From NCBI GenBank assembly GCA_950097015.1, contig CATNEN010000024.1:2480001-2544000 (forward strand): a DNA stretch of 64,000 nt. Direction: 5' to 3'. Shown piece after piece: positions 226 to 52,132 of this stretch; position 1 is the stretch's first letter, and each line of letters starts with the position of its first letter. The notes beneath the pieces are model-generated. The model had not been told where the DNA came from and did not search any database. It saw nothing but the letters and a program-made list of their open reading frames with translations. Source of the stretch: Macrostomum hystrix. Its lineage: Eukaryota; Animalia; Platyhelminthes. The translations under genes were made by a program, and so were the position numbers.

Positions 226-359
226 TCATACACTTGAACTTCGTCTGTTCTTTCTATGAAGTAATTTGCCTGTTCGAATTCCATAATAGTTCGTGGGTGA
301 TGTTACGAGCTATTTAATTTTTTCTGCGCAACTTTTACTTGAATTCTGTTTCATTACAG

Positions 360-3300
360 ATGCCACACCTGACATTATTGCTCAGCCTTCTGTCATCAAT
401 CCTAGGCTGTTGTCTTTCCGCAGTCAATATAACTGTCTATCCTACCGCTGAGCAGCTGGTCAAGCCCGGCTGTGATTGGTCCGACTGGCAGTGCTCTGAG
501 AAGCCCGGCAATCCGCCTAGCTGCACACTGTTCAAGGAATGGAACTGCTCAGGCCAGCCCTACCAACGGCTCGAGTACTATCACTATAGTCAGTTTTACA
601 AGGGCATCAGCTGCAATACCAGGGAGTCACTATCATCTTGTCTGACAGTGCCAGACTACTCAACTGGCTATTCTGAGCAGCCCCGTTGGTGCTCTTGGCA
701 GGAGTGGCAACAGTGGAGATACGTCTGCTTAGACACAGCGATACGTGACCACTCCTGGCTGCAAACTGCATTGTACAAGTATGGAAGTGAGTTCCGTGTT
801 CAGTGGACATGTTTATCCAAGCGTACCTGGTAGCTCCAGCTCAGAGGACATGTTTATCCAAGCGAACCAGTAGCTCTCGCTGCGGTAAGGTATCGCTTGT
901 CCAAACGAATCCCTTGTAGCTGAGTTCGAGCTTGTCTTAACTCAAGACTTTGACTCACAAGAGTTTTATCACAGACTAGTTCTGTTTATCACTGGCTAGT
1001 TCTGTTTATCACAGGCCAGTTCTGTTTATCACAGACTAGTTCTGTTTATCACTGGCTAGTTCCATTTAGCACAGGCTAGTTCCATTTAGCACAGGCTAGT
1101 TCTGCTTATCACTGGCTAGTTCTGTTTATCACAGGCCAGTTCTGTTTATCACAGACTAGTTCTGTTTATCACTGGCTAGTTCTGTTTATCACAGACTAGT
1201 TCTGTTTATCACAGACTAGTTCTGTTTATCACAGACTAGTTCTGTTTATCACTGGCTAGTTCTCTTTATCACTGGCTAGTTCTGTTTATCACTGGCTAGT
1301 TCTGTTTATCACTGGCTAGTTCTGTTTATCACAGACTAGTTCTGTTTATCACAGACTAGTTCTGTTTATCACAGGCCAGTTCTGTTTATCACAGGCCAGT
1401 TCTGTTTATCACAGGCCAGTTCTGTTTATCACAGGCTAGTTCCATTTATCACAGGCTAGTTCTGTTTATCACAGACTAGTTCTGTTTATCACAGGCCAGT
1501 TCTGTTTATCACTAGCTAGTTCTGTTTATCACAGGCTAGTTCCATTTATCACAGGCTAGTTATGTTTATCACTGGCTAGTTCTGTTTATCACTGGCTAGT
1601 TCTGTTTATCACAGGCTAGTTCTGTTTATCACTGGCTAGTTCCATTTATCACAGGCCAGTTCTGTTTATCACAGGCCAGTTCTGTTTATCACAGGCTAGT
1701 TCTGCTTATCACAGGCTAGTTCCATTTATCACAGGCTAGTTCCTTTTATCACAGGCCAGTTCTGTTTATCACAGGCTAGTTCTGTTTATCACCGGCTAGT
1801 TCTGTTTATCACAGACTAGTTCTGTTTATCACAGGCTAGTTCTGTTTATCACTGGCTAGTTATTTTTATCACTGGCTAGTTCTGTTTATCACTGGCTAGT
1901 TCTGTTTATCACTGGCTAGTTCTGTTTATCACAGGCTAGTTCTGTTTATCACAGGCTAGTTCTGTTTATCACAGGCTAGTTCCATTTATCACAGGCCAGT
2001 TCTGTTTATCACAGGCCAGTTCTGTTTATCACAGGCTAGTTCTGTTTATCACAGGCCAGTTCTGTTTATCACAGGCTAGTTCCATTTATCACAGGCTAGT
2101 TCCATTTATCACAGGCCAGTTCTGTTTATCACAGGCTAGTTCTGTTTATCACAGGCTAGTTCTGTTTATCACAGGCTAGTTCCATTTATCACAGGCTAGT
2201 TCTGTTTATCACAGAACTATTCTGTTTTATCACAAACTAGTTCTGTTTATCATAGGCCAGTTCTTTTTATCACAGGCCAGTTCTGTTTATCACAGGCTAG
2301 TTCTGTTTATCACAGGCTAGTTCCATTTATCACAGGCTAGTTCCATTTATCACAGGCTAGTTCCATTTATCACAGGCCAGTTCTGTTTATCACAGAACTA
2401 TTCTGTTTTATCACAAACTAGTTCTGTTTATCATAGGCCAGTTCTGTTTATCACAGGCCAGTTCTGTTCATCACAGGCTAGTTCTGTTTATCACAGGCCA
2501 GTTCCATTTATCACAGGCAAGTTCCATTTATCACAGGCTAGTTCCATTTATCACAGGCTAGTTCCATTTATCACAGGCTAGTTCCATTTATCACAGGCTA
2601 GTTCCATTTAGCACAGGCTAGTTCCATTTAGCACAGGCTAGTTCTGCTTATCACTGGCTAGTTCTGTTTATCACAGGCCAGTTCTGTTTATCACAGACTA
2701 GTTCTGTTTATCACTGGCTAGTTCTGTTTATCACAGACTAGTTCTGTTTATCACAGACTAGTTCTGTTTATCACAGGGCAGTTCTGTTTATCACAGGCCA
2801 TACGCGTATATTTTCTGCGTCCCCAGACAATCAGCGGGCCGACGGTCTGTGGCTGCAGCTGCGCAGCCGAGCCTGCCGATGTCCGGGCAGCCAGTTTGGA
2901 GTCGGTTGCTCAGGGTTCGACCAGCAGGCAGCTTACACGGCACAGATTGAGGAGTTGGAGGCTCACAGACTATCAGCCAGTCGGCAGTCGGACTGGTGTC
3001 CCTGGTCAGACTGGTCCAGCGTCTGCAGCTGCGTCACGCCATACTCGGGCGTGTCAAACCGCAGCCGCCTCTGCTGTGCCTGGACGCCTGGAGCACAATG
3101 TGCCGGTTTAGACAGGGACTCGAGGCCCTGCCACTGCAGGTTCACACAGACTTGGCCACCGCCTAAATCTGCCAATGAGTCGGCTTCGGCATTCTCTCGG
3201 TATTCGGTCATAGTGACGGTGGTTCTTCCACTAATCCTTGTGCTGCTGCTAATTGGCGTCTGCTTTGCTGGTTATCGATGGTAATAATAATAATTGCAGA

Positions 3301-4204
3301 AGGGCTGTGGGCCATAGCACATCATTTGGTGACAATAGACCTTCAGCCAGCGAGGAGGCAATTTTGCCCATTTCGCTGACTCCTGAGCACACACGCACAC
3401 AGATACTGTACGCAGGCACACGCTCTGCGTACAGTACAGTGACCATTCCACGGGTCATTGCAGTGTCACTCTATGATCATTTCACGGGTCATTGCAGTGT
3501 TACCCTGGGATCATTTCACGGGTCATGGCAGTGTTACCCTGGGATCATTTCATCAGGTCATTGCAGTGTTACCCTGTGATCATTCCACGGGTCATTGCAG
3601 TGTCACTCTATGATCATTTCACGGGTCATTGCAGTGTTACCCTGGGATCATTTCACGGGTCATGGCAGTGTTACCCTGGGATCATTTCATCAGGTCATTG
3701 CAGTGTTACCCTGTGATCATTCCACGGGTCATTGCAGTGTTACCCTGTGATCATTCCACGGGTCATTGCAATGTCACCCTGTGATCATTTCATGGGTCAT
3801 TGCAGTGTCACCCTAGGATCATTTCACGGGTCATTGCAGTGTCACCCTGTGATCATTTCACGGGTCATTGCAGTGTCACCCTGTGATCATTCCACGGGTC
3901 ATTGTAGTGTTATCCTGGTATCATTTCACGGGTCATTGTAGTGTTATCCTGGGATCATTTCACGGTCATTTCAGTGTTATCCTGTAATCACTTTTGTGTT
4001 TTTCATTCGCATCGCAGCCAAAAAGGTCAGCAGCAGCAACAGCAGCAGTCACATCAGCAGTCTGAGCTGTTGCCAGCGGCGTCAACAGTTGTTAGTCAGC
4101 AGCCGGTCATTCAAGTCACACCGACGGCACCCACCGTCGCCGACAGCTCCTCGAACGAGCCGCCGCTTCCTTCGTACGAGGAGGCTGTAAAACTGATGGT
4201 CTAG
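360..4204 (+). CDS. TSP1/TSR-like type-I membrane protein with PY tail, copy 1 (exon 1 carries a 41-nt duplication: either frameshifted or a micro-intron)
   Basis: Exons 360-884 (ATG directly after ttcattacag; donor G|gtaagg, phase 1), 2827-3280 (ccccag|; donor TG|gtaata, phase 2), 4018-4204 (cgcag|; TAG). Signal peptide MPHLTLLLSLLSSILGCCLSA, WSDWQC/WCSWQEW/WCPWSDWSSVC..RSRLC motifs, TM VIVTVVLPLILVLLLIGVCFAGY, tail PPLPSYEEAV. 374 aa if 830-870 is spliced out; otherwise stops at 833. Confidence 0.75.
968..2800. repeat. 20-bp intronic minisatellite (acaggctagttctgtttatc), ~1.8 kb
   Basis: Fills intron 1 of copy 1; variant units (agact/tggct/aggcc, 21-bp agaactattctgttttatc). Confidence 0.95.
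3430..3985. repeat. 34-bp intronic minisatellite (cacgggtcattgcagtgttaccctgtgatcatt.)
   Basis: Intron 2 of copy 1; source of the HFTGHCSVTL/RVIAV ORFs. Confidence 0.95.
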
Positions 4205-4727
4205 TAAATTAGACTGAACCTTTTTATTGGCAATTCTATTTTACCAGTCTTTAGGCTAATATTATGTACTATATACTTGTATATTGTATGCTTGCCTGTT
4301 TGTTAGGTATGAAATCAGTCAATATCTTTTAACAGTTTCAGTACGCTTAACTGAACAGGTCTTTCTCACCTTTCGCTTGCTGTGTTACATTATGTAAAAA
4401 TGTTTCATTAAAAACATTAGCGCATTTTTCTTAGCTTCTTTTCATACCCGTGATTTAAAATACCTGTGCCACTTGCCTCAGGTGCGGCAATAAAAACAGT
4501 TTATTAGCTTTCTGCTGCTGCTGCTGCAGTTCTGACAGCTTTCCTGTTTTATGTTTATATTGTCAATTACGCAATTTATTAGCGACAGTAAAAATTCTAT
4601 TCAATAAACGATTTGCACTATTAACTGATATTAATCTCCCGGTTTATTTAAAGAATTGTGTCAAATGAATTTAATGCACTGCCTCATAACTCTGCGCAAC
4701 TTTGACTTGAATTCTGTTTCATTACAG

Positions 4728-7700
4728 ATGCCACACCTGACATTATTGCTCAGCCTTCTGTCATCAATCCTAGGCTGTTGTCTTTCCGCAGTCAATATAA
4801 CTGTCTATCCTACCGCTGAGCAGCTGGTCAAGCCCGGCTGTGATTGGTCCGACTGGCAGTGCTCTGAGAAGCCCGGCAATCCGCCTAGCTGCACACTGTT
4901 CAAGGAATGGAACTGCTCAGGCCAGCCCTACCAACGGCTCGAGTACTATCACTATAGTCAGTTTTACAAGGGCATCAGCTGCAATACCAGGGAGTCACTA
5001 TCATCTTGTCTGACAGTGCCAGACTACTCAACTGGCTATTCTGAGCAGCCCCGTTGGTGCTCTTGGCAGGAGTGGCAACAGTGGAGATACGTCTGCTTAG
5101 ACACAGCGATACGTGATCACTCCTGGCTGCAAACTGCATTGTACAAGTATGGAAGTGAGTTCCGTGTTCAGTGGACATGTTTATCCAAGCGTACCTGGTA
5201 GCTCCAGCTCAGAGGACATGTTTATCCAAGCGAACCAGTAGCTCTCGCTGCGGTAAGGTATCGCTTGTCCAAACGAATCCCTTGTAGCTGAGTTCGAGCT
5301 TGTCTTAACTCAAGACTTTGACTCACAAGAGTTTTATCACAGACTAGTTCTGTTTATCACTGGCTAGTTCTGTTTATCACAGGCCAGTTCTGTTTATCAC
5401 AGACTAGTTCTGTTTATCACAGACTAGTTCTGTTTATCACAGACTAGTTCTGTTTATCACAGGCCAGTTCTGTTTATCATAGACTAGTTCTGTTTATCAC
5501 TGGCTAGTTCTGTTTATCACTGGCTAGTTCTGTTTATCACAGGCCAGTTCTGTTTATCACAGACTAGTTCTGTTTATCACAGACTAGTTCTGTTTATCAC
5601 AGACTAGTTCTGTTTATCACTGGCTAGTTCTGTTTATCACTGGCTAGTTCCATTTATCACTGGCTAGTTCTGTTTATCACTGGCTAGTTCTGTTTATCAC
5701 AGGCCAGTTCTGTTTATCACAGACTAGTTCTGTTTATCACTGGCTAGTTCTGTTTATCACAGGCTAGTTCCATTTATCACAGGCTAGTTCTGTTTATCAC
5801 AGGCCAGTTCTGTTTATCACAGACTAGTTCTGTTTATCACTGGCTAGTTCTGTTTATCACAGGCCAGTTCTGTTTATCACAGACTAGTTCTGTTTATCAC
5901 TGGCTAGTTCTGTTTATCACAGGCTAGTTCCATTTATCACAGGCTAGTTCTGTTTATCACTGGCTAGTTCTGTTTATCACAGGCCAGTTCTGTTTATCAC
6001 AGACTAGTTCTGTTTATCACTGGCTAGTTCTGTTTATCACAGGCTAGTTCTGTTTATCACAGACTAGTTCTGTTTATCACTGGCTAGTTCTGTTTATCAC
6101 AGGCCAGTTCTGTTTATCACAGACTAGTTCTGTTTATCACTGGCTAGTTCTGTTTATCACAGGCCAGTTCTGTTTATCACAGACTAGTTCTGTTTATCAC
6201 TGGCTAGTTCTGTTTATCACAGGCTAGTTCCATTTATCACAGGCTAGTTCTGTTTATCACTGGCTAGTTCTGTTTATCACAGACTAGTTCTGTTTATCAC
6301 TGGCTAGTTCTGTTTATCACAGACTAGTTCTGTTTATCACAGACTAGTTCTGTTTATCACTGGCTAGTTCTGTTTATCACAGGCCAGTTCTGTTTATCAC
6401 ATACTAGTTCTGTTTATCACTGGCTAGTTCTGTTTATCACAGGCTAGTTCCATTTATCACAGGCTAGTTCTGTTTATCACTGGCTAGTTCTGTTTATCAC
6501 AGGCTAGTTCTGTTTATCACAGACTAGTTCTGTTTATCACAGGCTAGTTCTGTTTATCACAGGCTAGTTCTGTTTATCACAGGCCAGTTCTGTTTATCAC
6601 AGAACTATTCTGTTTTATCACAGGCTAGTTCTGTTTATCACAGGCTAGTTCTGTTTATCACAGGCTAGTTCTGTTTATCACAGACTAGTTCTGTTTATCA
6701 CAGGCTAGTTCTGTTTATCACAGGCTAGTTCTGTTTATCACAGGCTAGTTCTGTTTATCACAGGCTAGTTCTGTTTATCACAGGCTAGTTCTGTTTATCA
6801 CAGAACTATTCTGTTTTATCTCAGACTAGTTCTGTTTATCACAGGCCAGTTCTGTTTATCACAGAACTATTCTGTTTTATCACAGACTAGTTCTGTTTAT
6901 CACAGGCCAGTTCTGTTTATCACAGAACTATTCTGTTTTATCACAGACTAGTTCTGTTTATCACAGGCCAGTTCTGTTTATCACAGGCCAGTTCTGTTTA
7001 TCACAGAACTATTATGTTTTATCACAGACTAGTTCTGTTTATCACAGACTAGTTCTGTTTATCACAGGCTAGTTCTGTTTATCACAGGCTAGTTCTGTTT
7101 ATCACAGGCCAGTTCTGTTTATCACAGATCTATTCTGTTTTTTCACAGGCTAGTTCTGTTTATCACAGGCTAGTTCTGTTTATCACAGGCTAGTTCTGTT
7201 TATCACAGACTAGTTCTGTTTATCACAGGCTAGTTCTGTTTATCACAGGCTAGTTCTGTTTATCACAGGCCAGTTCTGTTTATCACAGAACTATTCTGTT
7301 TTATCACAGGCTAGTTCTGTTTATCACAGGCTAGTTCTGTTTATCACAGGCTAGTTCTGTTTATCACAGACTAGTTCTGTTTATCACAGGCTAGTTCTGT
7401 TTATCACAGGCTAGTTCTGTTTTTCACAGGCCAGTTCTGTTTATCACAGGCTAGTTCTGTTTATCACAGGCTAGTTCTGTTTATCAAAGAACTATTCTGT
7501 TTTATCTCAGACTAGTTCTGTTTATCACAGGCCAGTTCTGTTTATCACAGAACTATTCTGTTTTATCACAGACTAGTTCTGTTTATCACAGGCCAGTTCT
7601 GTTTATCACAGAACTATTCTGTTTTATCACAGACTAGTTCTGTTTATCACAGGCCAGTTCTGTTTATCACAGGCCAGTTCTGTTTATCACAGAACTATTA

Positions 7701-10439
7701 TGTTTTATCACAGACTAGTTCTGTTTATCACAGACTAGTTCTGTTTATCACAGGCTAGTTCTGTTTATCACAGGCTAGTTCTGTTTATCACAGGCCAGTT
7801 CTGTTTATCACAGATCTATTCTGTTTTATCACAGGCTAGTTCTGTTTATCACAGGCTAGTTCTGTTTATCACAGACTAGTTCTGTTTATCACAGGCTAGT
7901 TCTGTTTATCACAGGCTAGTTCTGTTTATCACAGGCCAGTTCTGTTTATCACAGGCTAGTTCTGTTTATCACAGGCTAGTTCTGTTTATCACAGAACTAT
8001 TCTGTTTTATCTCAGACTAGTTCTGTTTATCACCGGCCAGTTCTGTTTATCACAGAACTATTCTGTTTTATCACAGACTAGTTCTGTTTATCACAGGCCA
8101 GTTCTGTTTATCACAGGCCAGTTCTGTTTATCACAAACTAGTTCTGTTTTATCACAGAACTATTCTGTTTTATCACAGACTAGTTCTGTTTATCACAGGC
8201 CAGTTCTGTTTATCACAGGCCAGTTCTGTTTGTCACAGAACTAATATGTTTTATCACAGACTAGTTCTGTTTATCACAGGCTAGTTCTGTTTATCACAGG
8301 CTAGTTCTGTTTATCACTGGCTAGTTCCATTTATCACAGGCTAGTTCCATTTATCACAGGCCAGTTCTGTTTATCACAGAACTATTCTTTTTTATCACAA
8401 ACTAGTTCTGTTTATCACAGGCCAGTTCTGTTTATCACAGGCCATACTCGTATATTTTCTGCGTCCCCAGACAATCAGCGGGCCGACGGTCTGTGGCTGC
8501 AGCTGCGCAGCCGAGCCTGCCGCTGTCCGGGCAGCCAGTTTGGAGGCGGTTGCTCAGGGTTCGACCAGCAGGCAGCTTACACGGCACAGATTGAGGAGTT
8601 GGAGGCTCACAGACTATCAGCCAGTCGGCAGTCGGACTGGTGTCCCTGGTCAGACTGGTCCAGCGTCTGCAGCTGCGTCACGCCATACTCGGGCGTGTCA
8701 AACCGCAGCCGCCTATGCCGCGCCTGGACGCCTGGAGCACAATGCGCCGGTTTAGACAGGGACTCGAGGCCCTGCCGCTGCAGGTTCACGCAGACTTGGC
8801 CACCGCCTAAATCTGCCAATGAGTCGGCTTCGGCATTCTCTCGTTATTCGGTCATAGTGACGGTGGTTCTTCCACTAATCCTTGTGCTGCTGCTAATTGG
8901 CGTCTGCTTTGCTGGTTATCGATGGTAATAATAATAATTGCAGATGGGCTGTGGGCAATAGCACATCATTTGGTGACAATAGACCTTCAGCCAGCGAGGA
9001 GGCAATTTTGCCCATTTCGCTGACTCCTGAGCACACACGCACACGCTCTGCGTACAGTACAGTGACCATTCCACGGGTCATTGCAGTGTCATCCTGGGAT
9101 CATTTCACGGGTCATTGCAGTGTCACCCTGTGATCATTTCACGGGTCATTGCAGTGTTACCCTGGGATCATTCCACGAGTCATTGCAGTGTCACCCTGTG
9201 ATCATTTCACGGGTCATTGCAGTGTTACCCTGGGATCATTCCACGAGTCATTGCAGTGTCACCTTGTGATCATTTCACGGGTCATTGCAGTGTTACCCTG
9301 GGATCATTTCATCAGGTCATTGCAGTGTTACCCTGTGATCATTCCACGGGTCATTGCAGTGTCACCCTGTGATCATTCCACGGGTCATTGCAGTGTCACC
9401 CTATGATCATTCCACGGGTCATTGCAGTGTCACCCTGTGATCATTCCACGGGTCATTGCAGTGTCACCCTGTGATCATTTCACGGGTCATTGCAGTGTCA
9501 CCCTGTGATCATTTCACGGGTCATTGCAGTGTCACCCTGTGATCATTTCACGGGTCATTGCAGTGTTACCCTGTGATCATTCCACGGGTCATTGCAATGT
9601 CACCCTGTGATCATTTCATGGGTCATTGCAGTGTAATCCTGGGATCATTTCACGGGTCATTGCAGTGTCATCCTGGGATCATTTCACGGGTCATTGCAGT
9701 GTTACCCTGGGATCATTCCACGGGTCATTGCAGTGTCACCCTGTGATCATTTCACGGGTCATTGCAGTGTTACCCTGTGATCATTTCACGGGTCATTGCA
9801 GTGTTACCCTGGGATCATTCCACGGGTCATTGCAGTGTCACCCTGTGATCATTCCACGGGTCATTGTTGTGTTATCCTGGTATCATTTCACGGGTCATTG
9901 TAGTGTTATCCTGGGATCATTTCACGGGTCATTGCAGTGTCATCCTGGGATCATTTCACGGGTCATTGCAGTGTTACCCTGGGATCATTTCATCAGGTCA
10001 TTGCAGTGTTACCCTGTGATCATTCCACGGGTCATTGCAGTGTCACCCTAGGATCATTTCACGGGTCATTGCAGTGTCACCCTGTGATCATTTCACGGGT
10101 CATTGCAGTGTCACCCTGTGATCATTCCACGGGTCATTGTAGTGTTATCCTGGTATCATTTCACGGGTCATTGTAGTGTTATCCTGGGATCATTTCACGG
10201 TCATTTCAGTGTTATCCTGTAATCACTTTTGTGTTTTTCATTCGCATCGCAGCCAAAAAGGTCAGCAGCAGCAACAGCAGCAGTCACATCAGCAGTCTGA
10301 GCTGTTGCCAGCGGCGTCAACAGTTGTTAGTCAGCAGCCGGTCATTCAAGTCACACCGACGGCACCCACCGTCGCCGACAGCTCCTCGAACGAGCCGCCG
10401 CTTCCTTCGTACGAGGAGGCTGTAAAACTGATGGTCTAG
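4728..10439 (+). CDS. TSP1/TSR-like type-I membrane protein with PY tail, copy 2 (same 41-nt duplication)
   Basis: Exons 4728-5252, 8471-8924, 10253-10439, near-identical to copy 1 with the same junctions; TAG at 5199-5201 lies inside candidate micro-intron 5198-5238. Confidence 0.75.
5336..8442. repeat. 20-bp intronic minisatellite, ~3.1 kb (expanded in copy 2)
   Basis: Same unit as 968-2800, with visible higher-order 60/80-bp periodicity. Confidence 0.95.
9060..10220. repeat. 34-bp intronic minisatellite, ~1.15 kb
   Basis: Same unit as 3430-3985, about twice as long. Confidence 0.95.
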
Positions 10440-10962
10440 AAAATTAGACTGAACCTTTTTATTGGCAATTCTATTTTACCAGTCTTTAAGCTAATATTAT
10501 GTACTATATACTTGTATATTGTATGCTTGCCTGTTTGTTAGGTATGAAATCAGTCAATATCTTTTAACAGTTTCAGTACGCTTAACTGAACAGGTCTTTC
10601 TCACCTTTCGCTTGCTGTGTTACATTATGTAAAAATGTTTCATTAAAAACATTAGCGCATTTTTCTTAGCTTCTTTTCATACCCGTGATTTAAAATACCT
10701 GTGCCACTTGCCTCAGGTGCGGCAATAAAAACAGTTTATTAGCTTTCTGCTGCTGCTGCTGCAGTTCTGACAGCTTTCCTGTTTTATGTTTATATTGTCA
10801 ATTACGCAATTTATTAGCGACAGTAAAAATTCTATTCAATAAACGATTTGCACTATTAACTGATATTAATCTCCCGGTTTATTTAAAGAATTGTGTCAAA
10901 TGAATTTAATGCACTGCCTCACAACTCTGCGCAACTTTTACTTGAATTCTGTTTCATTACAG

Positions 10963-13620
10963 ATGCCACACCTGACATTATTGCTCAGCCTTCTGTCATC
11001 AATCCTAGGCTGTTGTCTTTCCGCAGTCAATATAACTGTCTATCCTACCGCTGAGCAGCTGGTCAAGCCCGGCTGTGATTGGTCCGACTGGCAGTGCTCT
11101 GAGAAGCCCGGCAATCCGCCTAGCTGCACACTGTTCAAGGAATGGAACTGCTCAGGCCAGCCCTACCAACGGCTCGAGTACTATCACTATAGTCAGTTTT
11201 ACAAGGGCATCAGCTGCAATACCAGGGAGTCACTATCATCTTGTCTGACAGTGCCAGACTACTCAACTGGCTATTCTGAGCAGCCCCGTTGGTGCTCTTG
11301 GCAGGAGTGGCAACAGTGGAGATACGTCTGCTTAGACACAGCGATACGTGACCACTCCTGGCTGCAAACTGCATTGTACAAGTATGGAAGTGAGTTCCGT
11401 GTTCAGTGGACATGTTTATCCAAGCGAACCAGTAGCTCTCGCTGCGGTAAGGTATCGCTTGTCCAAACGAATCCCTTGTAGCTGAGTTCGAGCTTGTCTT
11501 AACTCAAGACTTTGACTCACAAGAGTTTTATCACAGACTAGTTCTGTTTATCACTGGCTAGTTCTGTTTATCACAGGCCAGTTCTGTTTATCACAGACTA
11601 GTTCCATTTATCACAGGCTAGTTCCATTTATCACAGGCTAGTTCCATTTATCACAGGCTAGTTCCATTTATCACAGGCTAGTTCCATTTAGCACAGGCTA
11701 GTTCCATTTAGCACAGGCTAGTTCCATTTATCACAGGCTAGTTCTGCTTATCACTGGCTAGTTCCATTTATCACTGGCTAGTTCCATTTATCACAGGCTA
11801 GTTCCATTTATCACAGGCTAGTTCCATTTATCACAGGCTAGTTCCATTTATCACTGGCTAGTTCCATTTATCACAGGCTAGTTCCATTTATCACAGGCCA
11901 GTTCTGTTTATCACAGGCCACTTCTGTTTATCACAGGCTAGTTCTGTTTATCACAGGCTAGTTCCATTTATCACAGGCTAGTTCCTTTTATCACAGGCCA
12001 GTTCTGTTTATCACAGGCTAGTTCTGTTTATCACAGGCTAGTTCTGTTTATCACTGGCTAGTTCTGTTTATCTCTGGCTAGTTCTGTTTATCACTGGCTA
12101 GTTCTGTCTATCACAGACTAGTTCTGTTTATCACAGGCTAGTTCTGTTAATCACAGGCCAATTCTGTTTATCACAGAACTATTCTGTTTTATCACAGACT
12201 AGTTCTGTTTATCACAGGACAGTTCTGTTTATCACAGGCCAGTTCTGTTTATCACAGACTAGTTCTGTTTATCACAGGCTAGTTCTGTTTATCACAGGCT
12301 AGTTCTGTTTATCACAGGCTAGTTCTGTTTATCACAGACTAGTTCTGTTTATCACAGGCTAGTTCTGTTTATCACCGGCAAGTTCTGTTTATCACAGGCC
12401 AGTTCTGTTTATCACAGAACTATTCTGTTTTATCACAGGCTAGTTCTGTTTATCACAGGCTAGTTCTGTTCTTCACAGGCTAGTTCTGTTTATCACAGGC
12501 TAGTTCTGTTTATCACACGCCAGTTCTGTTTATCACAGAACTTTTCTGTTTTATCACAGGCTAGTTCTGTTTATCACAGGCCAGTTCTGTTTATCACAGG
12601 CTAGTTCTGTTTATCACAGGCTAGTTCTGTTTATCACAGGCTAGTTCTGTTTTAACACAGAACTATTCTGTTTTATCACAGACTAGTTCTGTTTATCACA
12701 GGCTAGTTCTGTTTATCACAGGCTAGTTCTGTTTATCACTGGCCAGTTCTGTTTATCACAGAACTATTCTGTTTTATCACAGACTAGTTCCATTTATCAC
12801 AGGCCAGTTCTGTTTATCACAGGCTAGTTCTGTTTATCACAGGCTAGTTCTGTTTATCACAGGCTAGTTCCATTTATCACAGGCTAGTTCCATTTATCAC
12901 AGGCCAGTTCTGTTTATCACAGAACTATTCTGTTTTATCAAAAACTAGTTCTGTTTATCACAGGCCAGTTCTGTTTATCACAGGCCATACTCGTATATTT
13001 TCTGCGTCCCCAGACAATCAGCGGGCCGACGGTCTGTGGCTGCAGCTGCGCAGCCGAGCCTGCCGCTGTCCGGGCAGCCAGTTTGGAGGCGGTTGCTCAG
13101 GGTTCGACCAGCAGGCAGCTTACACGGCACAGATTGAGGAGTTGGAGGCTCACAGACTATCAGCCAGTCGGCAGTCGGACTGGTGTCCCTGGTCAGACTG
13201 GTCCAGCGTCTGCAGCTGCGTCACGCCATACTCGGGCGTGTCAAACCGCAGCCGCCTCTGCCGCGCCTGGACGCCTGGAGCACAATGCGCCGGTTTAGAC
13301 AGGGACTCGAGGCCCTGCCGTTGCAGGTTCACGCAGACTTGGCCACCGCCTAAATCTGATACCGAATCGCGATTGTCTTTTGTGAAATATTTCGGCGCAA
13401 TTGTTTTGTTTTTTTTAGGCACCGTGCTGCTATTGTTAATTTTCGTGTTCTTCGCTGTAAGGTGAGTTATTTTATTATATTTTTCTTTATTTTCCGTTGC
13501 AAAAGGGTATTATTAATTGGAAAGCTGTGTGTGAGCTTGTTCATTTTATTTCTAACCATTTCTGTTTATTTCAAGTTTTGCAGTAAATAAAACCTATTTT
13601 GCAGCCTGAGACATCAATGA
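10963..13620 (+). CDS. TSP1/TSR-like type-I membrane protein, copy 3: intact ectodomain, different TM, very short tail without PY
   Basis: Exons 10963-11446 (484 nt, no duplication), 13014-13461 (diverges from copies 1/2 after ccgcctaaatctg; TM FGAIVLFFLGTVLLLLIFVFFAV; donor AG|gtgagt), putative last exon 13605-13620 (ttttgcag|C CTG AGA CAT CAA TGA). About 315 aa; last exon choice uncertain. Confidence 0.65.
11530..12985. repeat. 20-bp intronic minisatellite, ~1.45 kb
   Basis: Intron 1 of copy 3; same unit family, enriched in gttccatttatc variants. Confidence 0.95.
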
Positions 13621-13644
13621 CAACTGAGACAAAAAACATAAGCG

Positions 13645-13770
13645 TTACCACAGCAGCGGCAGCAGCAGCCTGAGCTGTTACAGCGGTATCAACACTTGTT
13701 ATCCAGTAGCCGGCCGTTCGAGTAGCCGCTGCCTTTGTACCGTAGTAGGCTCTAAAACTGATAGCCTGAC
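13645..13770 (+). pseudogene. Degenerate homolog of the PY-tail exon
   Basis: cagcagcggcagcagcagcctgagctgtta...ccgctgcctttgtaccgtagtaggctctaaaactgat aligns with exon 3 of copies 1/2 (cagcagtctgagctgttg...ccgcttccttcgtacgaggaggctgtaaaactgat) but has indels, stops and an LPSY-to-LPLY change. Confidence 0.7.
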
Positions 13771-14440
13771 TAGCTGGGCAAAACTTATTTGTGTGCCACA
13801 CAACAGGCTTTTTTTACCTTTAAGCCAACTTGTTACTAATCGTTTGTTTCTTTTTTTCTTGCATGCTTCTACGCATGGCATGAGTTTTTTTGCGCATGCT
13901 AAGTGGCTGCATAATGCCAAGTATTATTTATCAGTTCTCACGGACTAAGCTATTTTACTTCGCTTATTTTTCTAGTTATTATATTTACAAGAAAAGTTTT
14001 TAAGACAATAAACTAGTTTTTTTACTGCTGCTTGAGAAAGAATTTCAGAATTTCTACTTATTTCTAGTTTGTCCTCTTCGTCTATTTCGTTATACTCGTA
14101 AAAGACAAGGTCGGATTTATTCTGAGAAACACATTTGCCCCACCTTTCAAACAGTAGAAAGAACACACTATTTTTCCTCCTGGGTAAATACCACAAGGTT
14201 ATTTCAAATACCGTTCCGCTCTTTACGATTAACTAACTTTCAAAGTGTTGTCCTCAACCAAGTGATCCTTTCAACCAAGGACCAAGGCCCTCTTGGTCCG
14301 CTTTAAAAGATTTAAAGCTATGAGTAAAATGTGTCAAAATGGACAGAAGGTTTTTAAATGCGTATTTTACAGAGGGCACCTCAGTGCTATCAGCGCTGAT
14401 TCAACACAGACATCTTCAGCATCACAGCCAATTACCTGGA

Positions 14441-15997
14441 ATGTCATCACTGTCTCTACAGTGGCTTCAGCTAGTGCTGCTGCTTTTGCTGCTGCAGATA
14501 GTCTTAGGCGCTGACGCCTCTCGTTTGCCATTGTTGTCTAATCCGGCAGAACAGAACTTGTCCAGCTGCCAACTGGGACCGTGGCGCTGTTCGGACAATC
14601 TCTTCACGGGCGGTGCGTCAACAGAGAGAAGTCACTGCAATCTGACCCGCAAAGTTGAATGCGACCATGGTGAAGCCGGGCTGTCTCGTTGGCAGGAATC
14701 GGTCTCAAGTCCATCGGAGCAGGCAGCTCTGGGTATCTCCTGTCCCATGGTCAAACTAGGCAGCTTTAGATGGCCAATGTACGTGTGTCATGCCCAGCCA
14801 GTGTACAATCTGACCGTGTACAGCATAGCCGACTGGTGTCCTTGGAGTTTCTGGACTAGTTGGTCGTTTAAGTGCAAAGATCTGGTTGGCGAGCGGATGA
14901 CGGACGTTCCCGAAGATGCTTCTGGTTAGTGAAAAGCTTTGTGTTTGGGATTCTCTGAATGATCTAAAACTAGACGATTTGGCATAGCAGACGTGAAAAT
15001 CTACTTTTATGATAGTTATAATAGTAGCGTGGTGGTTGCCTAGTGATTAGAGCGTCGAACCCACGACCTCAAGGTCCCATCGCAAGACCCTTACTTAACT
15101 CTGCATTGCTTCAGTTCACCCAGCTGTTGAATGGGTACCATGCAGCATTAGCTGTGTACAACTGTTGAGTCCGTGGACAGGGGGTCCATATTCCATCTCA
15201 ACCTGTCACTCCCAGGAGTCTGGCTGTCAACTAGAGAACGGAGTTGTAAGTGTCCCAGCGGTCCCGGGTCTTGTCCAGCCGGCGACACAGTCGAGAGGCG
15301 CCTTCGCCCGGCCTGGCGATCCGACGGCGGCGCCCTGGTCTGCAGCTGGTGCGCCTGGCTGTCGTGGAATAGCGACTGTCCCTGTTCCAGCTTTTCCATA
15401 AAGCCTCGGATGCGTCAGAGGCCCTGCGCCTGCAGCAACGGCAGCATTGAGCAGCCTGGCCGTCGCGAAGGTCGGAGTCACTTATTTTTGCCCAACACTC
15501 AGTTGAGCTGCTTCGGCTTTCCTATGGAAATCGAAACCTGTCCAACTTGCGTCGATACTTCCAAAGCGGCCAAGCCGAACTATCCCAGCGACTCGTCCGC
15601 CGGCGGTTGGCACAATCGGCCCTACGACGCCGGCGTCTCCAGGCGATCCAGCAGCGCCGGGGGACTTGTCGGCGGTCTGATAGGTGTAATCATTTCCATT
15701 TCAGCGCTGATCTGGTATCTCAAGCGTATCTGCAAAGGGTTAGTAATGCTCTGAAACTAAATACAGACTCCATTTATGATGATCTGCTCTAAACTAATCT
15801 TATAAGTGTCCTTTTTCAGAGCCTCTGGTAACACCGATAACAGCGTAGAGCAGCCGGTGGCTATTCCTTTAATTACCACTTCGACAGTACCTTCAGCGCC
15901 GCCGCCGGAACCTCGGCCCCAGCCCGACTTGGCTTTGCTACCACCGAGCTACGAGGAGGCCATCAAGCAAAAAATGTCGCAACCTAAAGCGTGTTGA
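14441..15997 (+). CDS. Diverged paralog: TSP1/TSR-like type-I membrane protein with PPSY tail (~394 aa)
   Basis: Exons 14441-14924 (484 nt, donor G|gttagt, phase 1), 15216-15738 (ctcccag|GA GTC TGG; donor GG|gttagt, phase 2), 15820-15997. Signal peptide, WCPWSFWTSW..GVWLSTRERSCKCP, WCAWLSW..RQRPC, TM GLVGGLIGVIISISALIWYL, LLPPSYEEAI. Same phases and exon-1 length as copy 3. Confidence 0.8.
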
Positions 15998-20400: not shown

Positions 20401-21876
20401 ATGCGCCAACTGCTAAGTGCAAACTGCAGCAGACGCCTGACCCGCTGCCTGTGTACCGCCCAAATAATTGGCGGCCTCGGCCTGCTGCTCATTGACGCTG
20501 CGATTGGTTTCTACTCTATTCAAAGCATTTTCGGCCTTGGATTCGTCTGCGGCCCCCTGTTAGCCCTAGCAGGCCTAGCCGGTTGCTATCGCGTTGCTAG
20601 GCGGCGCGAATTGAAACCGACGGCCGATTCAGCGGCCTGCCTCCGGCTGGTCAGCAATGCCGCCGCCCTGCTGACCTCGCTGCCCTGCGCCCTGCTGCTT
20701 GCGCCGGCTGCTTATCCGCATTCTGCCACTCTGGCCTCCGCTGCTGGCTATTGCGGCTTCCGCTTGCCTCAGCTCCCGGACTTACAGAGGCTCAATGCCA
20801 GGTGCGAACCAGTTTTTTTATTTAACGTAATTCAATAAGAGCTCTGAACTCCATGTTGTTATACCCTATTCTGTAAAAACCCTAACATTTTGTCTCATTA
20901 TTTGAAAAAATCACCACCCTATATCCTGCCTAAGATCCCTGATCCCATATCCCGACCAGAATAATCCCTGATCTCATTTCCCAAACAAAATAGTCCCTGA
21001 TCCCTTATCCTGCCCAAAATATCCCTGATCTCATATCCTAAACAAAAATATCCCTGATCCCCATTTCGCAATCAAAATAGTCCCTGATCCTTTATCCTGC
21101 CCAAAATATCCCTGATCTTATATCCTAAACAAAATAGTCCCTGATCCTTTATCCTGCCCAATATATCCCTGATCCCATATCCTAAACAAAATAGTCCCTG
21201 ATCCCTTATCCTGCCCAAAATATCCCTGATCCCATATCCTAAACAAAATAGTCCCTGATCCCTTATCCTGCCCAAAATATCACTGATCCCATATCCTAAA
21301 CAAAATAGTCCCTGATCCCTTATCCTGCCCAAAATATCCCTGATCCCATATCCTAAACAAAATTATCCCTGATCCCTTATCCTGCCCAAAATATCCCTGA
21401 TCCCCATTTCGCAATCAAAATAGTCCCTGATCCCTTATCCTGCCCAAAATATCCCTGATCCCATATCCTAAACAAAATTATCCCTGATACCTTATCCTGT
21501 CTAACAAAATTCCATGAGGCTAATGCAATTTGCAAGTCAATTCCTAGCATTAGAAACTGTTTTCCAAATCATCAGCAGCAGCAGCGACAGCGGAGTCGTC
21601 TCCCTGGCCAGCCACCTCGATGACGCTGACGCCGACGCTCGACGTTCTCTCGCCGCCATCTCCGTTGGCTACTCGGCCGCTTTGGCCTCGTTGGCTCTGG
21701 GCGGTCTGGCCACCATTGCGCAGCTGCTGCGCTGCTCGCCAGCTCTCGCTACCAACGACGAAAATGAAAATGCGGACAAGCCAGCAGGATACGAGGATGC
21801 GGTTGCTATGACATCAGTGGGCGTTGTCAACGGTGACAAAGCGCGAGCTACTGCAGCCAAACCGTGCGCCCTTTGA
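20401..21876 (+). CDS. Four-TM membrane protein, CD20/MS4A-like (~252 aa, 2 exons)
   Basis: Exons 20401-20801 (AG|gtgcga) and 21519-21876 are phase compatible, but both splice sites are weak. Hydrophobic segments AQIIGGLGLLLI, FGLGFVCGPLLALAGLAG, NAAALLTSLPCALLLA, YSAALASLALGGLA; C-terminal PAGYEDAV. Family assignment by motif resemblance only. Confidence 0.5.
20920..21505. repeat. 57-bp intronic minisatellite built from two related ~28-bp halves
   Basis: atccctgatcccttatcctgcccaaaat / atccctgatcccatatcctaaacaaaat repeats. Confidence 0.9.
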
Positions 21877-22716: not shown

Positions 22717-25700
22717 ATGTCCCTAGTGCAGTCGGTGCTATCTGCCTGGAAGGGCACCAGCTTCGAGCAGGTGAAGCAGGAGCTGGACGCCACCGCGGCT
22801 GACATCGCCGGCCAGCAGGACGCAGGAGATGCCGGCCGGAAGCGCCTAGTTGAGCTGAGCCGCGAATTCAAATCCGGCACCCCGGCCGAGGTGCGGAAAG
22901 CCGTGGCGCCTCTGCTGAAGAGCTTCCAGGCCGAGGTTGACAGCCTGTCGAAGCGGTCCAAGCACGCCGAGGCGGCCTTCCTCAGCGTCTACCAGAAGCT
23001 CATCGACCTGCCAGATCCGGCGCCGGCCTTCGATCATCTGGCCGGCATGCAGAAGCGGGTGCAGAGATGCAGCGATTTGGAAATTGAAAATAAACAACTG
23101 CGCGATCGCTTAGCCGAGTACAATGCCGAGTTTGCCGAGGCGAGTTGCTACCGACTGGACATTGTTGCGTGGATCTTGCTGGACTCCAATTCTCAGAATG
23201 GGATCGAGATCTTAATTGATCGTCAGAATGAGATTAGAATCTTCTAACATATTCAATATGAATTTTGGGATCTTTAAATATCATCGAAATCAGATCGAAG
23301 TCGTCAAATATCGTGAGAATAGGATTGGGATCTTGACGGATAAGTCAGAATGAAATTGGGATCTTGACGGATAGTCAGAATGAAATTGGGATCTTGAAGG
23401 ATAGTCAGAATGAAATTGGGATCTTGACGGATAGTCAGAATGGGATTGGGATCTTGAAGGATAGTCAGAATGAAATTGGGATCTTGACGGATAGTCAGAA
23501 TGAAATCGGGATCTTGAAGGATAGTCAGAATGAAATTGGGATCTTGAAGGATAGTCAGAATGAAATTGGGATCTTGACGGATAGTCAGAATGAAATTTGG
23601 ATATTGACGGATAGTCAGAATGAAATTGGGATGATGACGGATAGTCAGAATGAAATTGGGATCTTGAAGGATAGTCAGAATGAAATTGGGATCTTGACGG
23701 ATAGTCAGAATGGGATTGGGATCTTGACGGATAGTCAGAATGAAATTGGGATGATGACGGATAGTCAGAATGAAATCGGGATCTTGACGGATAGTCAGAA
23801 TGAAATTGGGATCTTGACGGATAGTCAGAATGAAATTGGGATCTTGACGGATAGTCAGAATGAAATTTGGATATTGACGGATAGTCAGAATGAAATTGGG
23901 ATCTTGACGGATAGTCAGAATGGGATTGGGATCTTGACGGATAGTCAGAATGAAATTGGGATCTTGACGGATAGTCAGAATGGGATTGGGATCTTGACGG
24001 ATAGTCGGAATGAAATTGGGATCTTGACGGATAGTCAGAATGAAATTGGGATCTTGACGGATAGTCAGAATGGGATTGAGATCTGACGGATAGTCAGAAT
24101 GGGATTGGGATCATTAAAAATCCCTAGGATGGAGGGTCTAGGGTGTCTAAAAATATTCGCAGTATGGATTAGTATATCAAGAGAATCTTCTATGACTATA
24201 TTTCTCTTCTCCTTTTTTTCAACCGCAACACGGCACTAATACAGGTGCGCAACCAGGAGGTGACGGTCAAGCAGCTGCGCGAGCGCCTTCGCGATCTGGA
24301 AGAATCCGTGGAGTCTCGCGTAGCAAATTCCGTTCGCGATCGGGAGCGCCAACTGGCGTTAGACTACGGCGAGAAGGCGAAACAGTTGAGCTCGGCTCAG
24401 CTTGAGGCTGCTCAGCGATTGGGCGAGGCTGAGCAGCGCGCCGCTCAGCTGCAGTCGGCGCTCGACTCCACTCGCGCCGAAGCGGCCAGCCTGAGACAGG
24501 CGCTGGATGACAGGTGAATGACGAAATTCCTGATGGGATATCCTGACGCTTTGGTCCCAAATCACCGAATTCTTTGATCCCAAATCACACAATTCTTTGA
24601 TCCCATTCCAAAATCACACAATTCTTTGATCACGAATCGCCCAATGCTAGGATCTCAAATCAATGCTTAATCTGTGTTCCCATATCTCCAGTGTTTATTT
24701 AATCGCAAAAATTACATCATCCTATGATTCCATTACGCCTTTTTTGTCCCAAATTAGTCGGTCTTAAATCAGACTAAACCTGAATTTCAATCCCAAATCC
24801 TCAAACGCGCAGGCAGTCGGCTCGCACAGACGAGATGGAACTGCTGGCGCAGGACGCCGAGAGGGCCAACGAGCGAGCCGCCCAGCTTGAGAAGGAACTG
24901 CTGGCTGCTCGGGCCCGCTTGGCAGGTCAGCGGACTTCGCCAGCCGGTTACGGCTCAACTTCTGACAACGCCAACGCCGCCGCAATCGCCGCCGCTGCCG
25001 CCGACGAAGCCGGGCAGTTTCGAAGAGCGGAGCTGGAGGCTCAGCTGGCTAGCAGGGAACGCGAACTGTCACAGCTGGCCGAGGACAACAGGTGAGACTG
25101 TGCTCAGAGAGCTGTCCATTGACCATACCTAACCCACAGGTGTCCATTTAACCTACCAGGCTCAGAGAGGTGTCCATTGACCATACCTAACCCACAGGTG
25201 TCCATTTAACCTACCAGGCTCAGAGAGCTGTCCATTGACCATACCTAACCCACAGGTGTCCATTTAACCTACTAGGCTCAGAGAGCTGTCCATTGACCAT
25301 ACCTAACCCACAGGTGTCCATTTAACCTACCAGGCTCAGAGAGGTGTCCATTGACCATACCTAACCCACAGGTGTCCATTTAACCTACCAGGCTCAGAGA
25401 GCTGTCCATTGACTATACCTAACCCACAAGTGTCCATTTAACCTACCAGGCTCAGAGAGGTGTCCATTGACCATACCTTACCCACGGGGTGTCCATTGAC
25501 TCTACCTCACCCAGAGAGGTGACCATTTACCCTTTTACCCTACCTGACCCAGAGAGGTGTCCATGGACCTCTACCTCAACTACAGAGATCCATAGACCAT
25601 ACCTGGCTCAGTGATTTCTATTAACCCTTCCTAAACTACAGAGGTGTCCATTGTCCATTCCTCACCCAGAGAGGTGTCCATTGACCCTACCTGAGCAGTA

Positions 25701-27293
25701 AGGCGTGGGTTGCTAACAGAAGAAAGCATTAGCCCCCCTATTGCCCCCTCGACCAGACGCCTTCAGCGGACCGCTGACGAGTTGCGCGAATCCCGCGCCC
25801 AGACAACGGCCGCGCTGGAGTCGCAGCTGGCCGACACTGTCAGACGGTTGGCAACCGCGGAGGAGCGCCTTCGCTATCAGAGCGACTACGACGAGATTCG
25901 TCGAGAGCTTCGCGTCCTCCAGACCGTCCAGTTCACCTACTCCGAGGAGGGCGACGACGCCGAGTCTTCGACCCTCAGCCTGGAGGAGCGGCTGGTGCGC
26001 CAGAACCGCACCCTGCAGAGTGAGGCCGCTGGCCTGCGGCTGCGCGCGGACCGGCTTCAGGCTGAGGTCGGCCGGCTAAGCGGCGAGCTGAACGAGTCGC
26101 GTGCCGACTGCGCGCGGCAGTCCAGGCTGGTTGAACAGCTAGAGGAGGATCTGCGCCGGGTGAAGGCCTTCTCCGCTATGTTCCGCGGCGCCGCCGAGGT
26201 CAGTGACAGCTAATATTGCAGAATATGTTAATTCTTAAGCTATAAACCACATCCCCATTTCTAATCCCTAAATGTCCCTGTTTCTAAGCCATTATCCCAT
26301 GGCTTAAACATTATCAAAGCAATTATTACCTGAGTTCCAAATTTCTAAGTGAATCCTAAAAATCCTTATCTGTTATAAGTTATCCCCTAATATCCCTATT
26401 TCTGAGCGACAATCCCCAATGTTCCCCATTTCTAATCAATTATCCCCAAAGATCCTCATTTTTTAAAGAGACGATCCCTAAAGACAGTCTCCAATTAGAC
26501 ATTCAAAATGTCATTCCCGAATCCCGATCCTGTTAGGATTTTAGGAGCAATAGTCTTCTTTTGACCAGGAGTACAATTTTTATCCCATTACCGCACGCAG
26601 GGCGAGGAAGGTTCCACCAATCAGTTTTTGTCACAAAATCAGCAACAGCAGCAGCAGGCGCATCAGAAGCAGCCCAGCTCGGAGGCGGAGGCGCTAGCCA
26701 GTGTGCTATCTGGCGGCCAGTCGGATTCCAGCGCGGCGCCGCAGGACGCGTCACTATTGAGCATAGTGCAAAGCCAGCGAGAACGCTACCGCGCCAGAGC
26801 CCAGGAGCTGGAGGTGGCCGCGGTCGCTCAACAGCAACAGCTCGGCGTCCTGCGCACCGAGCTGGACAAAGTCCGCTCAGACAATGTGAAACTTTACGAG
26901 AAGATTCGCTTCCTGCAGTCCTACCAGGCTGGCGAGTGTCAGCAGGGCGGCGGAGCCGGCAGCGGCGGCGAATTCAGCGGCTACTCGGAGGCCTACGAGA
27001 CTAGGCTGGATCCGTTTGCTAAATTCAGCCGGCGCGAACGGGAGCGCAAGATTGCGGAACTGCGACCCCACGATAAGCTCACCCTGAGTATAGGCCGGCT
27101 GATCCTCAGCAGCCGTACAGCCAGGGCTTTCGTGTTCTGCTACACAGTCCTGCTGCACCTGCTAGTGTTCCTGGTGCTGTTTCGCATGGCCTACATGGAA
27201 ACTGACAGGCGGGATCTGTCAGCCGAGTGTCAGCACAAATTTCAGGAGCACATGCTGCGAGTACACAATGACTCCGGCCAACACCGCCACTGA
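22717..27293 (+). CDS. CASP: Protein CASP (golgin; CUX1/CUTL1 alternative-product homolog, yeast Coy1 family), 701 aa
   Basis: Exons 22717-23139 (GC donor GAG|gcgagt), 24245-24513, 24813-25091, 25757-26198, 26601-27293; total 2106 nt in frame. Recognisable motifs LLKSFQAEVDSLSKRSKHAEAAF, EYNAEFAE|VRNQEVT, LLSIVQSQRERYR, DNVKLYEKIRFLQSY, YETRLDPF, TM FCYTVLLHLLVFLVLF with the conserved Y and H. Confidence 0.93.
23325..24115. repeat. 30-bp intronic minisatellite (ttgacggatagtcagaatgaaattgggatc)
   Basis: CASP intron 1; source of ORF 23364..24086. Confidence 0.95.
25098..25700. repeat. ~58-59-bp intronic minisatellite, decaying toward its 3' end
   Basis: ctcagagagctgtccattgaccatacctaacccacaggtgtccatttaacctaccagg repeats in CASP intron 3. 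Confidence 0.9.
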
Positions 27294-52002: not shown

Positions 52003-52092
52003 TTAATTCTGTCCATCAAGTGCCTCCCTGCTGCGCGACTTCTGCTTCAGAATTTCCTGTCTAAATTTTTCGGCTAGAATTTTAAACGACTC

Positions 52093-52132
<40 letters not shown>

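What the first reader, a model, noticed from the sequence alone, without database searches (positions are those of the whole stretch)
320..15997. Tandem array of four TSR-like PY-tail receptor genes at different stages of diversification
Seen: four head-to-tail 3-exon genes with identical intron phases (1, 2). Each has a signal peptide, a Trp/Cys-rich TSP1-like ectodomain and one TM helix; copies 1, 2 and the diverged paralog end in L/PPSYEEA. Copies 1-3 are nearly identical in the ectodomain, whereas the fourth gene is highly diverged but keeps a 484-nt first exon, exactly as in copy 3. Known: L/PPxY motifs bind WW domains of Nedd4-family ligases and YAP, and TSR ectodomains mediate adhesion and recognition. 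Inference: an uncharacterised, actively recombining cell-surface receptor family resembling paired immune or allorecognition receptor clusters. I recognise no named family.
Basis: partly seen in the sequence, partly recalled or inferred. Interest (0 to 1): 0.85.

Follow-up and report, generated by a model that had tools for sequence, protein, structure and literature searches.

The report
Flatworm thrombospondin-repeat membrane protein array
Four neighbouring genes of a Macrostomum flatworm encode unstudied cell-surface proteins with thrombospondin-type repeats outside and a ubiquitin-ligase docking motif inside; one gene was recently triplicated and one copy lost its inner tail, but nothing points to immune-style diversification.

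Summary
The array is real: four head-to-tail three-exon genes (intron phases 1, 2) for type-I membrane proteins. Macrostomum lignano has one syntenic orthologue of copies 1-3 (gene A) and one of gene 4 (gene B), each about 42% identical; no relatives were found outside Macrostomum. One correction: the orthologue fixes the exon-1 donor of copies 1-3 at 427 nt, so the '484 nt as in copy 3' match is a coincidence. The membrane-proximal module matches solved thrombospondin repeats (profile E 3e-9). The tail motif (L/PPSYEEA) is conserved across species and resembles Commissureless. Copies 1-3 are a recent triplication with mosaic exchange, and their differences are mostly synonymous (7:3, dN/dS 0.14). 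That argues against an assembly error and against diversifying selection. Copy 3 is a chimera: same ectodomain, an older paralog's intact TM helix, decayed PY exon. No ITIM/ITAM or charged TM residue was found, so the allorecognition reading is unsupported; population polymorphism is untested. Best reading: a Macrostomum-restricted TSR receptor or adaptor regulated by Nedd4-family ligases, with a possibly tail-less variant. The scan noted similar genes just upstream (unchecked).

The parts
360..4204 (+). Copy 1 (A-type), 355 aa: exons 360-786, 2827-3280, 4018-4204
   Evidence: donor and acceptor positions homologous to M. lignano BOX15_Mlig018523g2
4728..10439 (+). Copy 2 (A-type), 355 aa: exons 4728-5154, 8471-8924, 10253-10439
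10963..13620 (+). Copy 3 (chimeric A/A'), 296 aa: exons 10963-11389, 13014-13461, 13605-13620; tail of about 5 aa with any plausible acceptor
14441..15997 (+). Gene 4 (B-type), 394 aa: exons 14441-14924, 15216-15738, 15820-15997; orthologue of M. lignano BOX15_Mlig034364g2
323..4690 (+). Unit of the recent tandem duplication; begins only 37 nt upstream of the ATG. Repeated at 4691-10925 and, up to 13358, from 10926
354..359 (+). 3' splice-acceptor motif TTACAG directly before the ATG (also before 4728 and 10963; gene 4 and both M. lignano genes have the motif 10-21 nt upstream): candidate spliced-leader trans-splice site
   Evidence: background 7% of positions; motif [T/C]TNCAG from PMC8629364
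471..641 (+). Module 1 (aa 38-94), six conserved Cys; fold not assigned
687..786 (+). Module 2, N-half: WxxWxxWxxW strand (continues in exon 2 with RxRxCxCP); degenerate TSR-like
2994..3137 (+). Module 3 (aa 199-246), thrombospondin type-1 repeat-like
3207..3272 (+). Transmembrane helix of copy 1, followed by a juxtamembrane Cys
4166..4177 (+). LPSY (PY) motif of copy 1; also 10401 (copy 2) and PPSY at 15941 (gene 4)
800..876 (+). 41-nt imperfect tandem duplication in intron 1 of copies 1 and 2 (5168-5244), absent from copy 3; blocks the alternative GTAAG donor at 884
965..2798 (.). Intron-1 20-bp minisatellite, 92 units (155 units at 5333-8442; 73 at 11527-12985); different variant maps in each copy
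3439..3990 (.). Intron-2 34-bp minisatellite, 16 units (34 units at 9062-10225)
13359..13461 (+). Copy 3 alternative TM segment: open, gap-free homologue of the copy 1/2 TM region (11/34 aa, 50% nt)
13619..13770 (+). Decayed remnant of the PY exon (78% nt identity to exon 3 of copies 1/2; at least five stops, two frameshifts, one large deletion)

Best explanation
A Macrostomum-restricted family of type-I membrane glycoproteins with two or three degenerate thrombospondin type-1 repeats outside and one L/PPxY motif inside. Shown: gene structure, orthology and synteny with an ancestral A-B pair, TSR identity of module 3, conservation of the PY motif, recent triplication of A, purifying selection, chimeric tail-less copy 3. 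Inferred mechanism: the TSR ectodomain (probably C-mannosylated on WxxW) binds another surface or matrix protein. The PY tail recruits a WW-domain Nedd4-family ligase, which sends the protein itself or its bound partner to endosomes and lysosomes, as Commissureless does for Robo. Copies 1 and 2 are dosage duplicates made by unequal crossing-over. Copy 3 would bind the same ligand but escape PY-dependent turnover. The promoterless duplicates could be expressed as downstream cistrons by spliced-leader trans-splicing.
For: Orthologues and synteny with the TM gene and CASP/CUX1 downstream. Module-3 profile hits TSP-1 (E 2.9e-9), then weakly properdin, UNC5 and BAI1; all 12 rows are TSR proteins. 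ESM features point to TSR clusters (0.81, lead only). L/PPSYEEA is kept in all four intact lineages at about 42% overall identity. TM plus tail weakly matches WBP-1 (E 3e-4, below cutoff). Comm's LPSY motif acts through Nedd4 (PMC12101832). Copy 1 vs 2: 7 synonymous, 3 non-synonymous, p 0.003; vs M. lignano dN/dS about 0.3. Spacers of 523 and 820 nt are under the 1-kb operon criterion and the acceptor motif precedes each start.
Against: No binding, expression or localisation data. No Pfam TSP_1 hit. CSxTCG and the O-fucose consensus are absent. Modules 1 and 2 are unassigned and both structure predictions were low confidence. There is only one PY motif, whereas Comm has two. PY motifs also bind non-ligase WW proteins. 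dS to M. lignano is near saturation.
Confidence: 0.55

Rival explanations
1. Paired immune or allorecognition receptor cluster: diversified recognition ectodomains, with signalling and non-signalling partners.
For: Same ectodomain with different TM/tail in copy 3. Intergenic recombination (clustering of copy-1-private sites, Fisher p 5e-4). Fast evolution: 42% identity against 83-95% in CASP blocks. The two M. lignano B copies differ by 8 non-synonymous and 1 synonymous change (not significant, p 0.69). An unchecked scan note reports more diverged paralogs just upstream.
Against: Recent copies are under purifying selection and copies 2 and 3 have identical ectodomains. No ITIM/ITAM and no charged TM residue, unlike the Botryllus FcoR receptors (PMC12582321). 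The A-B pair is syntenic across two distant species.
Confidence: 0.12
2. Developmental guidance or adhesion co-receptors like nematode MIG-21 or UNC-5; the PY motif only sets their own turnover, and the triplication is neutral copy-number drift with copy 3 on its way to pseudogene status.
For: TSR-plus-TM architecture as in MIG-21 (PMC12445740). Decayed tail exon in copy 3. An unpaired extra Cys (C226) in copy 1. Minisatellite-rich introns favour unequal exchange.
Against: Copy 3's TM segment stayed open and gap-free while the next exon collected 5-7 disablements (rough chance 0.01-0.03), and its three ectodomain differences from copy 2 are all synonymous. No sequence homology to MIG-21 was found.
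Confidence: 0.25
3. Copies 1-3 are an assembly artefact (haplotypes or one gene laid out in tandem).
For: About 99% identity in unique sequence, long VNTR introns, a single A gene in M. lignano; no read check was possible.
Against: Three different minisatellite lengths and variant maps. Differences are biased to synonymous sites. There are two precise head-to-tail junctions with near-identical spacers. Copy 3 has its own TM, intron 2 and tail remnant.
Confidence: 0.08

Closest known systems
M. lignano BOX15_Mlig018523g2 (A) and BOX15_Mlig034364g2 / UniRef A0A1I8IH73 (B), hypothetical proteins
   Same: Orthologues: same order, intron positions and phases, Cys/Trp pattern, PPSYEEA tail, same downstream genes.
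   Different: About 42% identical. A is single there within the fetched flanks, with no triplication and no tail-less copy. Neither gene was found in any paper.
C. elegans MIG-21 / UNC-5 (TSR-containing transmembrane proteins)
   Same: Single-pass proteins with extracellular TSRs carrying WxxW C-mannosylation motifs (PMC12445740; PMC6954052 abstract).
   Different: No homology beyond the generic TSR; TSRs here are degenerate. UNC-5 has Ig, ZU5 and death domains (own knowledge). The PY tail here is a separate feature.
Drosophila Commissureless / vertebrate PRRG4, Ndfip, WBP1-VOPP1-type PY adaptors
   Same: Single TM, juxtamembrane Cys in the intact genes, short low-complexity tail with an L/PPxY motif; Comm has LPSY followed by DEAL. 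Weak WBP-1 Pfam match.
   Different: These lack a TSR ectodomain; Comm has two PY motifs. The WBP-1 score of 21.9 is below the cutoff of 28.1.
Invertebrate allorecognition and paired-receptor clusters (Botryllus FF/FcoR, Hydractinia Alr)
   Same: Tandem single-pass receptor genes, intergenic recombination, a tail-less member.
   Different: Those are Ig-superfamily, hyperpolymorphic and carry ITIM/hemITAM motifs (PMC12582321). Here the ectodomain is TSR, the tail is PY, and selection is purifying.

Membership tests
Thrombospondin type-1 repeat (TSR) domain | WxxW(xxW) strand followed by Cys and an RxRxC strand | tested here: met
   Module 3 in all four lineages, module 2 in degenerate form
Thrombospondin type-1 repeat (TSR) domain | Significant sequence match to solved TSRs | tested here: met
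   Module 3: phmmer E 1e-6 to TSP-1 (summed over repeats; single repeat 0.007), profile E 2.9e-9. Modules 1 and 2 gave no TSR hit
Thrombospondin type-1 repeat (TSR) domain | Pfam TSP_1 / TSP1_spondin / TSP1_ADAMTS above cutoff | tested here: not met
Thrombospondin type-1 repeat (TSR) domain | CSxTCG motif / O-fucosylation consensus | tested here: not met
Thrombospondin type-1 repeat (TSR) domain | Three-stranded layered fold | tested here: inconclusive
   AF2 mean pLDDT 43-44; fold searches gave nothing significant
PY-motif transmembrane Nedd4 adaptors (Comm/PRRG/Ndfip/WBP1) | Conserved cytoplasmic L/PPxY motif | tested here: met
   Copies 1, 2, gene 4 and both M. lignano genes; absent from copy 3
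PY-motif transmembrane Nedd4 adaptors (Comm/PRRG/Ndfip/WBP1) | Homology to a named family | tested here: not met
   WBP-1 21.9 bits, below the 28.1 cutoff
PY-motif transmembrane Nedd4 adaptors (Comm/PRRG/Ndfip/WBP1) | WW-domain binding and ubiquitination of self or partner | not testable with these tools
   needs experiment
Paired / allorecognition receptor cluster | ITIM or ITAM tails, or charged TM residue | tested here: not met
   inspection of the models
Paired / allorecognition receptor cluster | Diversifying selection on the ectodomain | tested here: not met
   dN/dS 0.14-0.18 among copies, about 0.3-0.35 between species; pairwise averages and few sites
Paired / allorecognition receptor cluster | Tandem organisation with intergenic recombination | tested here: met
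Paired / allorecognition receptor cluster | Extreme allelic polymorphism in populations | not testable with these tools
SL trans-spliced operon (Macrostomum) | Unpaired [T/C]TNCAG acceptor at the 5' end and intergenic distance under 1 kb | tested here: met
   an upstream non-coding exon for copy 1 is not excluded
SL trans-spliced operon (Macrostomum) | SL-containing reads at those acceptors | not testable with these tools

The most novel reading that the evidence does not exclude
Together with the upstream paralogs noted by the scan, this is a larger cluster of TSR-based recognition receptors of flatworms. A PY-tailed form is endocytosed by Nedd4 and a tail-less form with the same ectodomain is kept by selection as a stable decoy. 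Ectodomains are re-homogenised by recombination and new copies are switched on at once by trans-splicing. That would be a paired-receptor logic built on ubiquitin-dependent turnover rather than ITIM/ITAM signalling.
Probability: 0.12. Interest if true: 0.7.

Novelty: new variant of a known kind. Interest (0 to 1): 0.33.

Why it matters
The combination of degenerate TSRs, one TM helix and a PY tail was not found as a named family, and it has been kept between distant Macrostomum species. It is a tractable candidate for ubiquitin-controlled surface recognition in a model with RNAi and transgenesis. The locus also catches tandem duplication, exchange and tail loss in progress, and offers a test of whether trans-splicing lets promoterless duplicates be expressed. 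Its parts are all familiar, and unchecked scan notes suggest that arrays of divergent single-pass genes are common in this genome, which limits the surprise.

Tried and rejected
1) 'Copies 1/2 are broken by a 41-nt duplication' and 'a new 41-nt GT-AG mini-intron (830-870) rescues them': dropped. The annotated M. lignano orthologue uses the homologous upstream GTGAG donor, which puts the duplication inside intron 1. 2) My first gene-4 acceptor (15279): wrong; 15216 restores the segment matching the orthologue. 3) Pfam exon by exon: no TSR hit. 4) Homologue searches: nothing for exon 1 by the word index; only M. lignano proteins otherwise (P0003 and P0004 are repetitive chance hits); nothing in metagenome contigs. 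A blank does not exclude remote relatives. 5) AF2 twice and two fold searches: uninformative. 6) ESM Atlas on exon 1: no usable hit. 7) A weak GPR180 hit for module 1 (E 0.016) was not reproduced with the 4-sequence profile. 8) The first TM amino-acid comparison was out of frame and was redone.
Full report
Observation. The region 360-15997 holds four same-strand genes. My first models used the GTAAG donor at 884/5252/11446. This gave a 484-nt first exon only in copy 3; in copies 1 and 2 it gave 525 nt with an in-frame stop, because of a 41-nt imperfect duplication. A profile of the first exons searched against 1.84 billion representatives returned two real relatives, both hypothetical proteins of Macrostomum lignano: BOX15_Mlig018523g2 (type A) and BOX15_Mlig034364g2 (type B). 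A brute-force search for the junctions that reproduce these annotated proteins gave phases 1 and 2 in both. It placed the type-A first donor at AGC|GTGAGC, homologous to GAA|GTGAGT after window position 786. With that donor, copies 1 and 2 are intact at 355 aa, copy 3 is 296 aa, and gene 4 (acceptor 15216) is 394 aa. The '484-nt exon shared by copy 3 and gene 4' is a coincidence of the wrong donor. Both donors fit the M. lignano consensus GT[G/A]AG (PMC8629364), so minor use of the downstream one is possible: it would add 19 aa in copy 3 and a premature stop in copies 1 and 2.

Origin and synteny. M. lignano has A then B, then a 234-aa TM gene, then CASP/CUX1, the same order as the window. Identity is 41-42% for both A and B, against 83-95% in the best CASP blocks. 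The window is therefore another Macrostomum species and these are fast-evolving genes. Only one A gene lies in the 10-kb flanks fetched, so the triplication appears specific to this lineage. Three word-index searches and a metagenome scan found nothing outside Macrostomum, and no paper names the loci.

Protein anatomy. Each protein has a signal peptide and three Cys-rich modules (18 Cys in the copy-2 ectodomain, 20 in gene 4). These are followed by a stalk, one TM helix, a juxtamembrane Cys, a Q/P/T-rich tail and L/PPSYEEA. Module 3 matches human thrombospondin-1 repeats. A four-sequence profile of it retrieves only TSR proteins: TSP-1 at E 2.9e-9, then weakly properdin, UNC5A/B and BAI1. Module 2 has WxxWxxW and RxRxCxCP and resembles module 3 by profile comparison (75%). 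Module 1 is unassigned. Pfam TSR models are not reached, CSxTCG and the O-fucose consensus are missing, and structure predictions were too weak to use. ESM features place the B orthologue near TSR clusters at 0.81, a lead only. The TM plus tail weakly resembles WBP-1. Commissureless uses an LPSY motif, followed by DEAL, to recruit Nedd4 and degrade Robo (PMC12101832).

The three A copies. The duplicated unit runs 323-4690 and starts 37 nt before the ATG. The intron minisatellites differ in length and variant order between copies (92/155/73 units). Copy 1 versus 2 shows 7 synonymous and 3 non-synonymous changes (dN/dS 0.14, p 0.003). Copy 2 versus 3 in the ectodomain shows 3 and 0. Random assembly error would give mostly non-synonymous changes, and diversifying selection would give an excess of them. 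Real allelic haplotypes laid out in tandem are not excluded by this test alone. Copy-1-private sites cluster near exon 2 (8 in 379 nt versus 0 in 601; Fisher p 5e-4), which points to recombination or conversion. Copy 3 switches at 13358 to an older paralog. Its TM segment is a gap-free, open homologue (11/34 aa, p 2e-4), while its last exon has at least five stops and two frameshifts. At that rate of damage an unselected 103-nt TM segment would stay open about 1-3% of the time (rough). I infer that a tail-less, membrane-anchored form has been tolerated or favoured; the stop lies in the last exon.

Expression architecture. Each start codon is preceded within 0-21 nt by the [T/C]TNCAG motif that marks trans-splice acceptors in M. 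lignano (6 of 6 family genes, of which four are independent; background 7%). The annotated A coding sequence begins right after that AG. Stop-to-start spacers are 523 and 820 nt, with AATAAA signals, under the 1-kb operon criterion of PMC8629364. Copies 2 and 3 did not inherit copy 1's upstream region, so operon-type trans-splicing is the simplest route to their expression. This is inference; no SL reads were seen.

Mechanism and rivals. Most likely (0.55): TSR ectodomains bind a surface or matrix partner, and the PY tail recruits a Nedd4-family ligase for endocytosis and degradation of the protein or its partner; copy 3 would be the turnover-resistant version. Rival: MIG-21/UNC-5-like guidance or adhesion proteins with neutral copy drift (0.25; PMC12445740). 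The allorecognition reading (0.12) fails the tests I could run: no ITIM/ITAM, no charged TM residue, purifying selection (compare PMC12582321). Population polymorphism is untested, and the two M. lignano B copies differ by 8 non-synonymous and 1 synonymous change (not significant). Assembly artefact: 0.08.

DNA upstream of the window was not available. An earlier scan note describes an array of diverged TSP1-like PPxY genes that ends at window position 786, which agrees with my donor, but I could not check those genes. Other notes suggest that arrays of divergent single-pass genes recur in this genome.

Verdict. Real, uncharacterised, Macrostomum-restricted as far as detectable, and built from familiar parts: a new variant of a known kind, interest 0.33.

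Noticed in passing
window 20401-21876: Two-exon multi-pass TM gene with no Pfam match; syntenic 234-aa orthologue in M. lignano is intronless (L001 21455-22159). Ends near a PY-like stretch (AGYEDAV at 21787) that is not kept in the orthologue.
   Followed up: partly
window 22717-27293: CASP/CUX1 gene (CUX1_N E 5e-37), with an acceptor motif 8 nt before its ATG.
   Followed up: partly
L002 1-8580: In the second M. lignano copy of the locus, similarity to gene A begins only at 8581, early in intron 2. Upstream lies a fragmented element with family-B DNA polymerase and PLA2-like ORFs, Polinton/adintovirus-like by my own knowledge. Exons 1-2 of A are not in the fetched stretch.
   Followed up: partly
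P0008 (UniRef A0A1I8G500): An M. lignano gene model fuses exon 2 of A to exons 1-2 of B; an annotation artefact or a trace of a polycistronic transcript.
   Followed up: no
L001 4441-4830: Gene upstream of A in M. lignano looks like a neuropeptide precursor (signal peptide, dibasic sites, amidation-like G-K ends); no Pfam hit.
   Followed up: partly
window 43251-47618: 1455-aa ORF containing a long coding minisatellite (DHQASGEI-type units), perhaps part of a nischarin-like gene (own impression, untested).
   Followed up: no
window 52003-60800, minus strand: Exons with PDZ-like, ankyrin-like and proline-rich segments, probably a SHANK-like gene (own impression, untested).
   Followed up: no
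window 3075: Copy 1 carries a private Arg-to-Cys change (C226) giving an odd number of ectodomain cysteines.
   Followed up: partly
whole window: Nearly every intron holds its own unrelated minisatellite (8-58-bp units); the M. lignano orthologous introns hold different ones.
   Followed up: no
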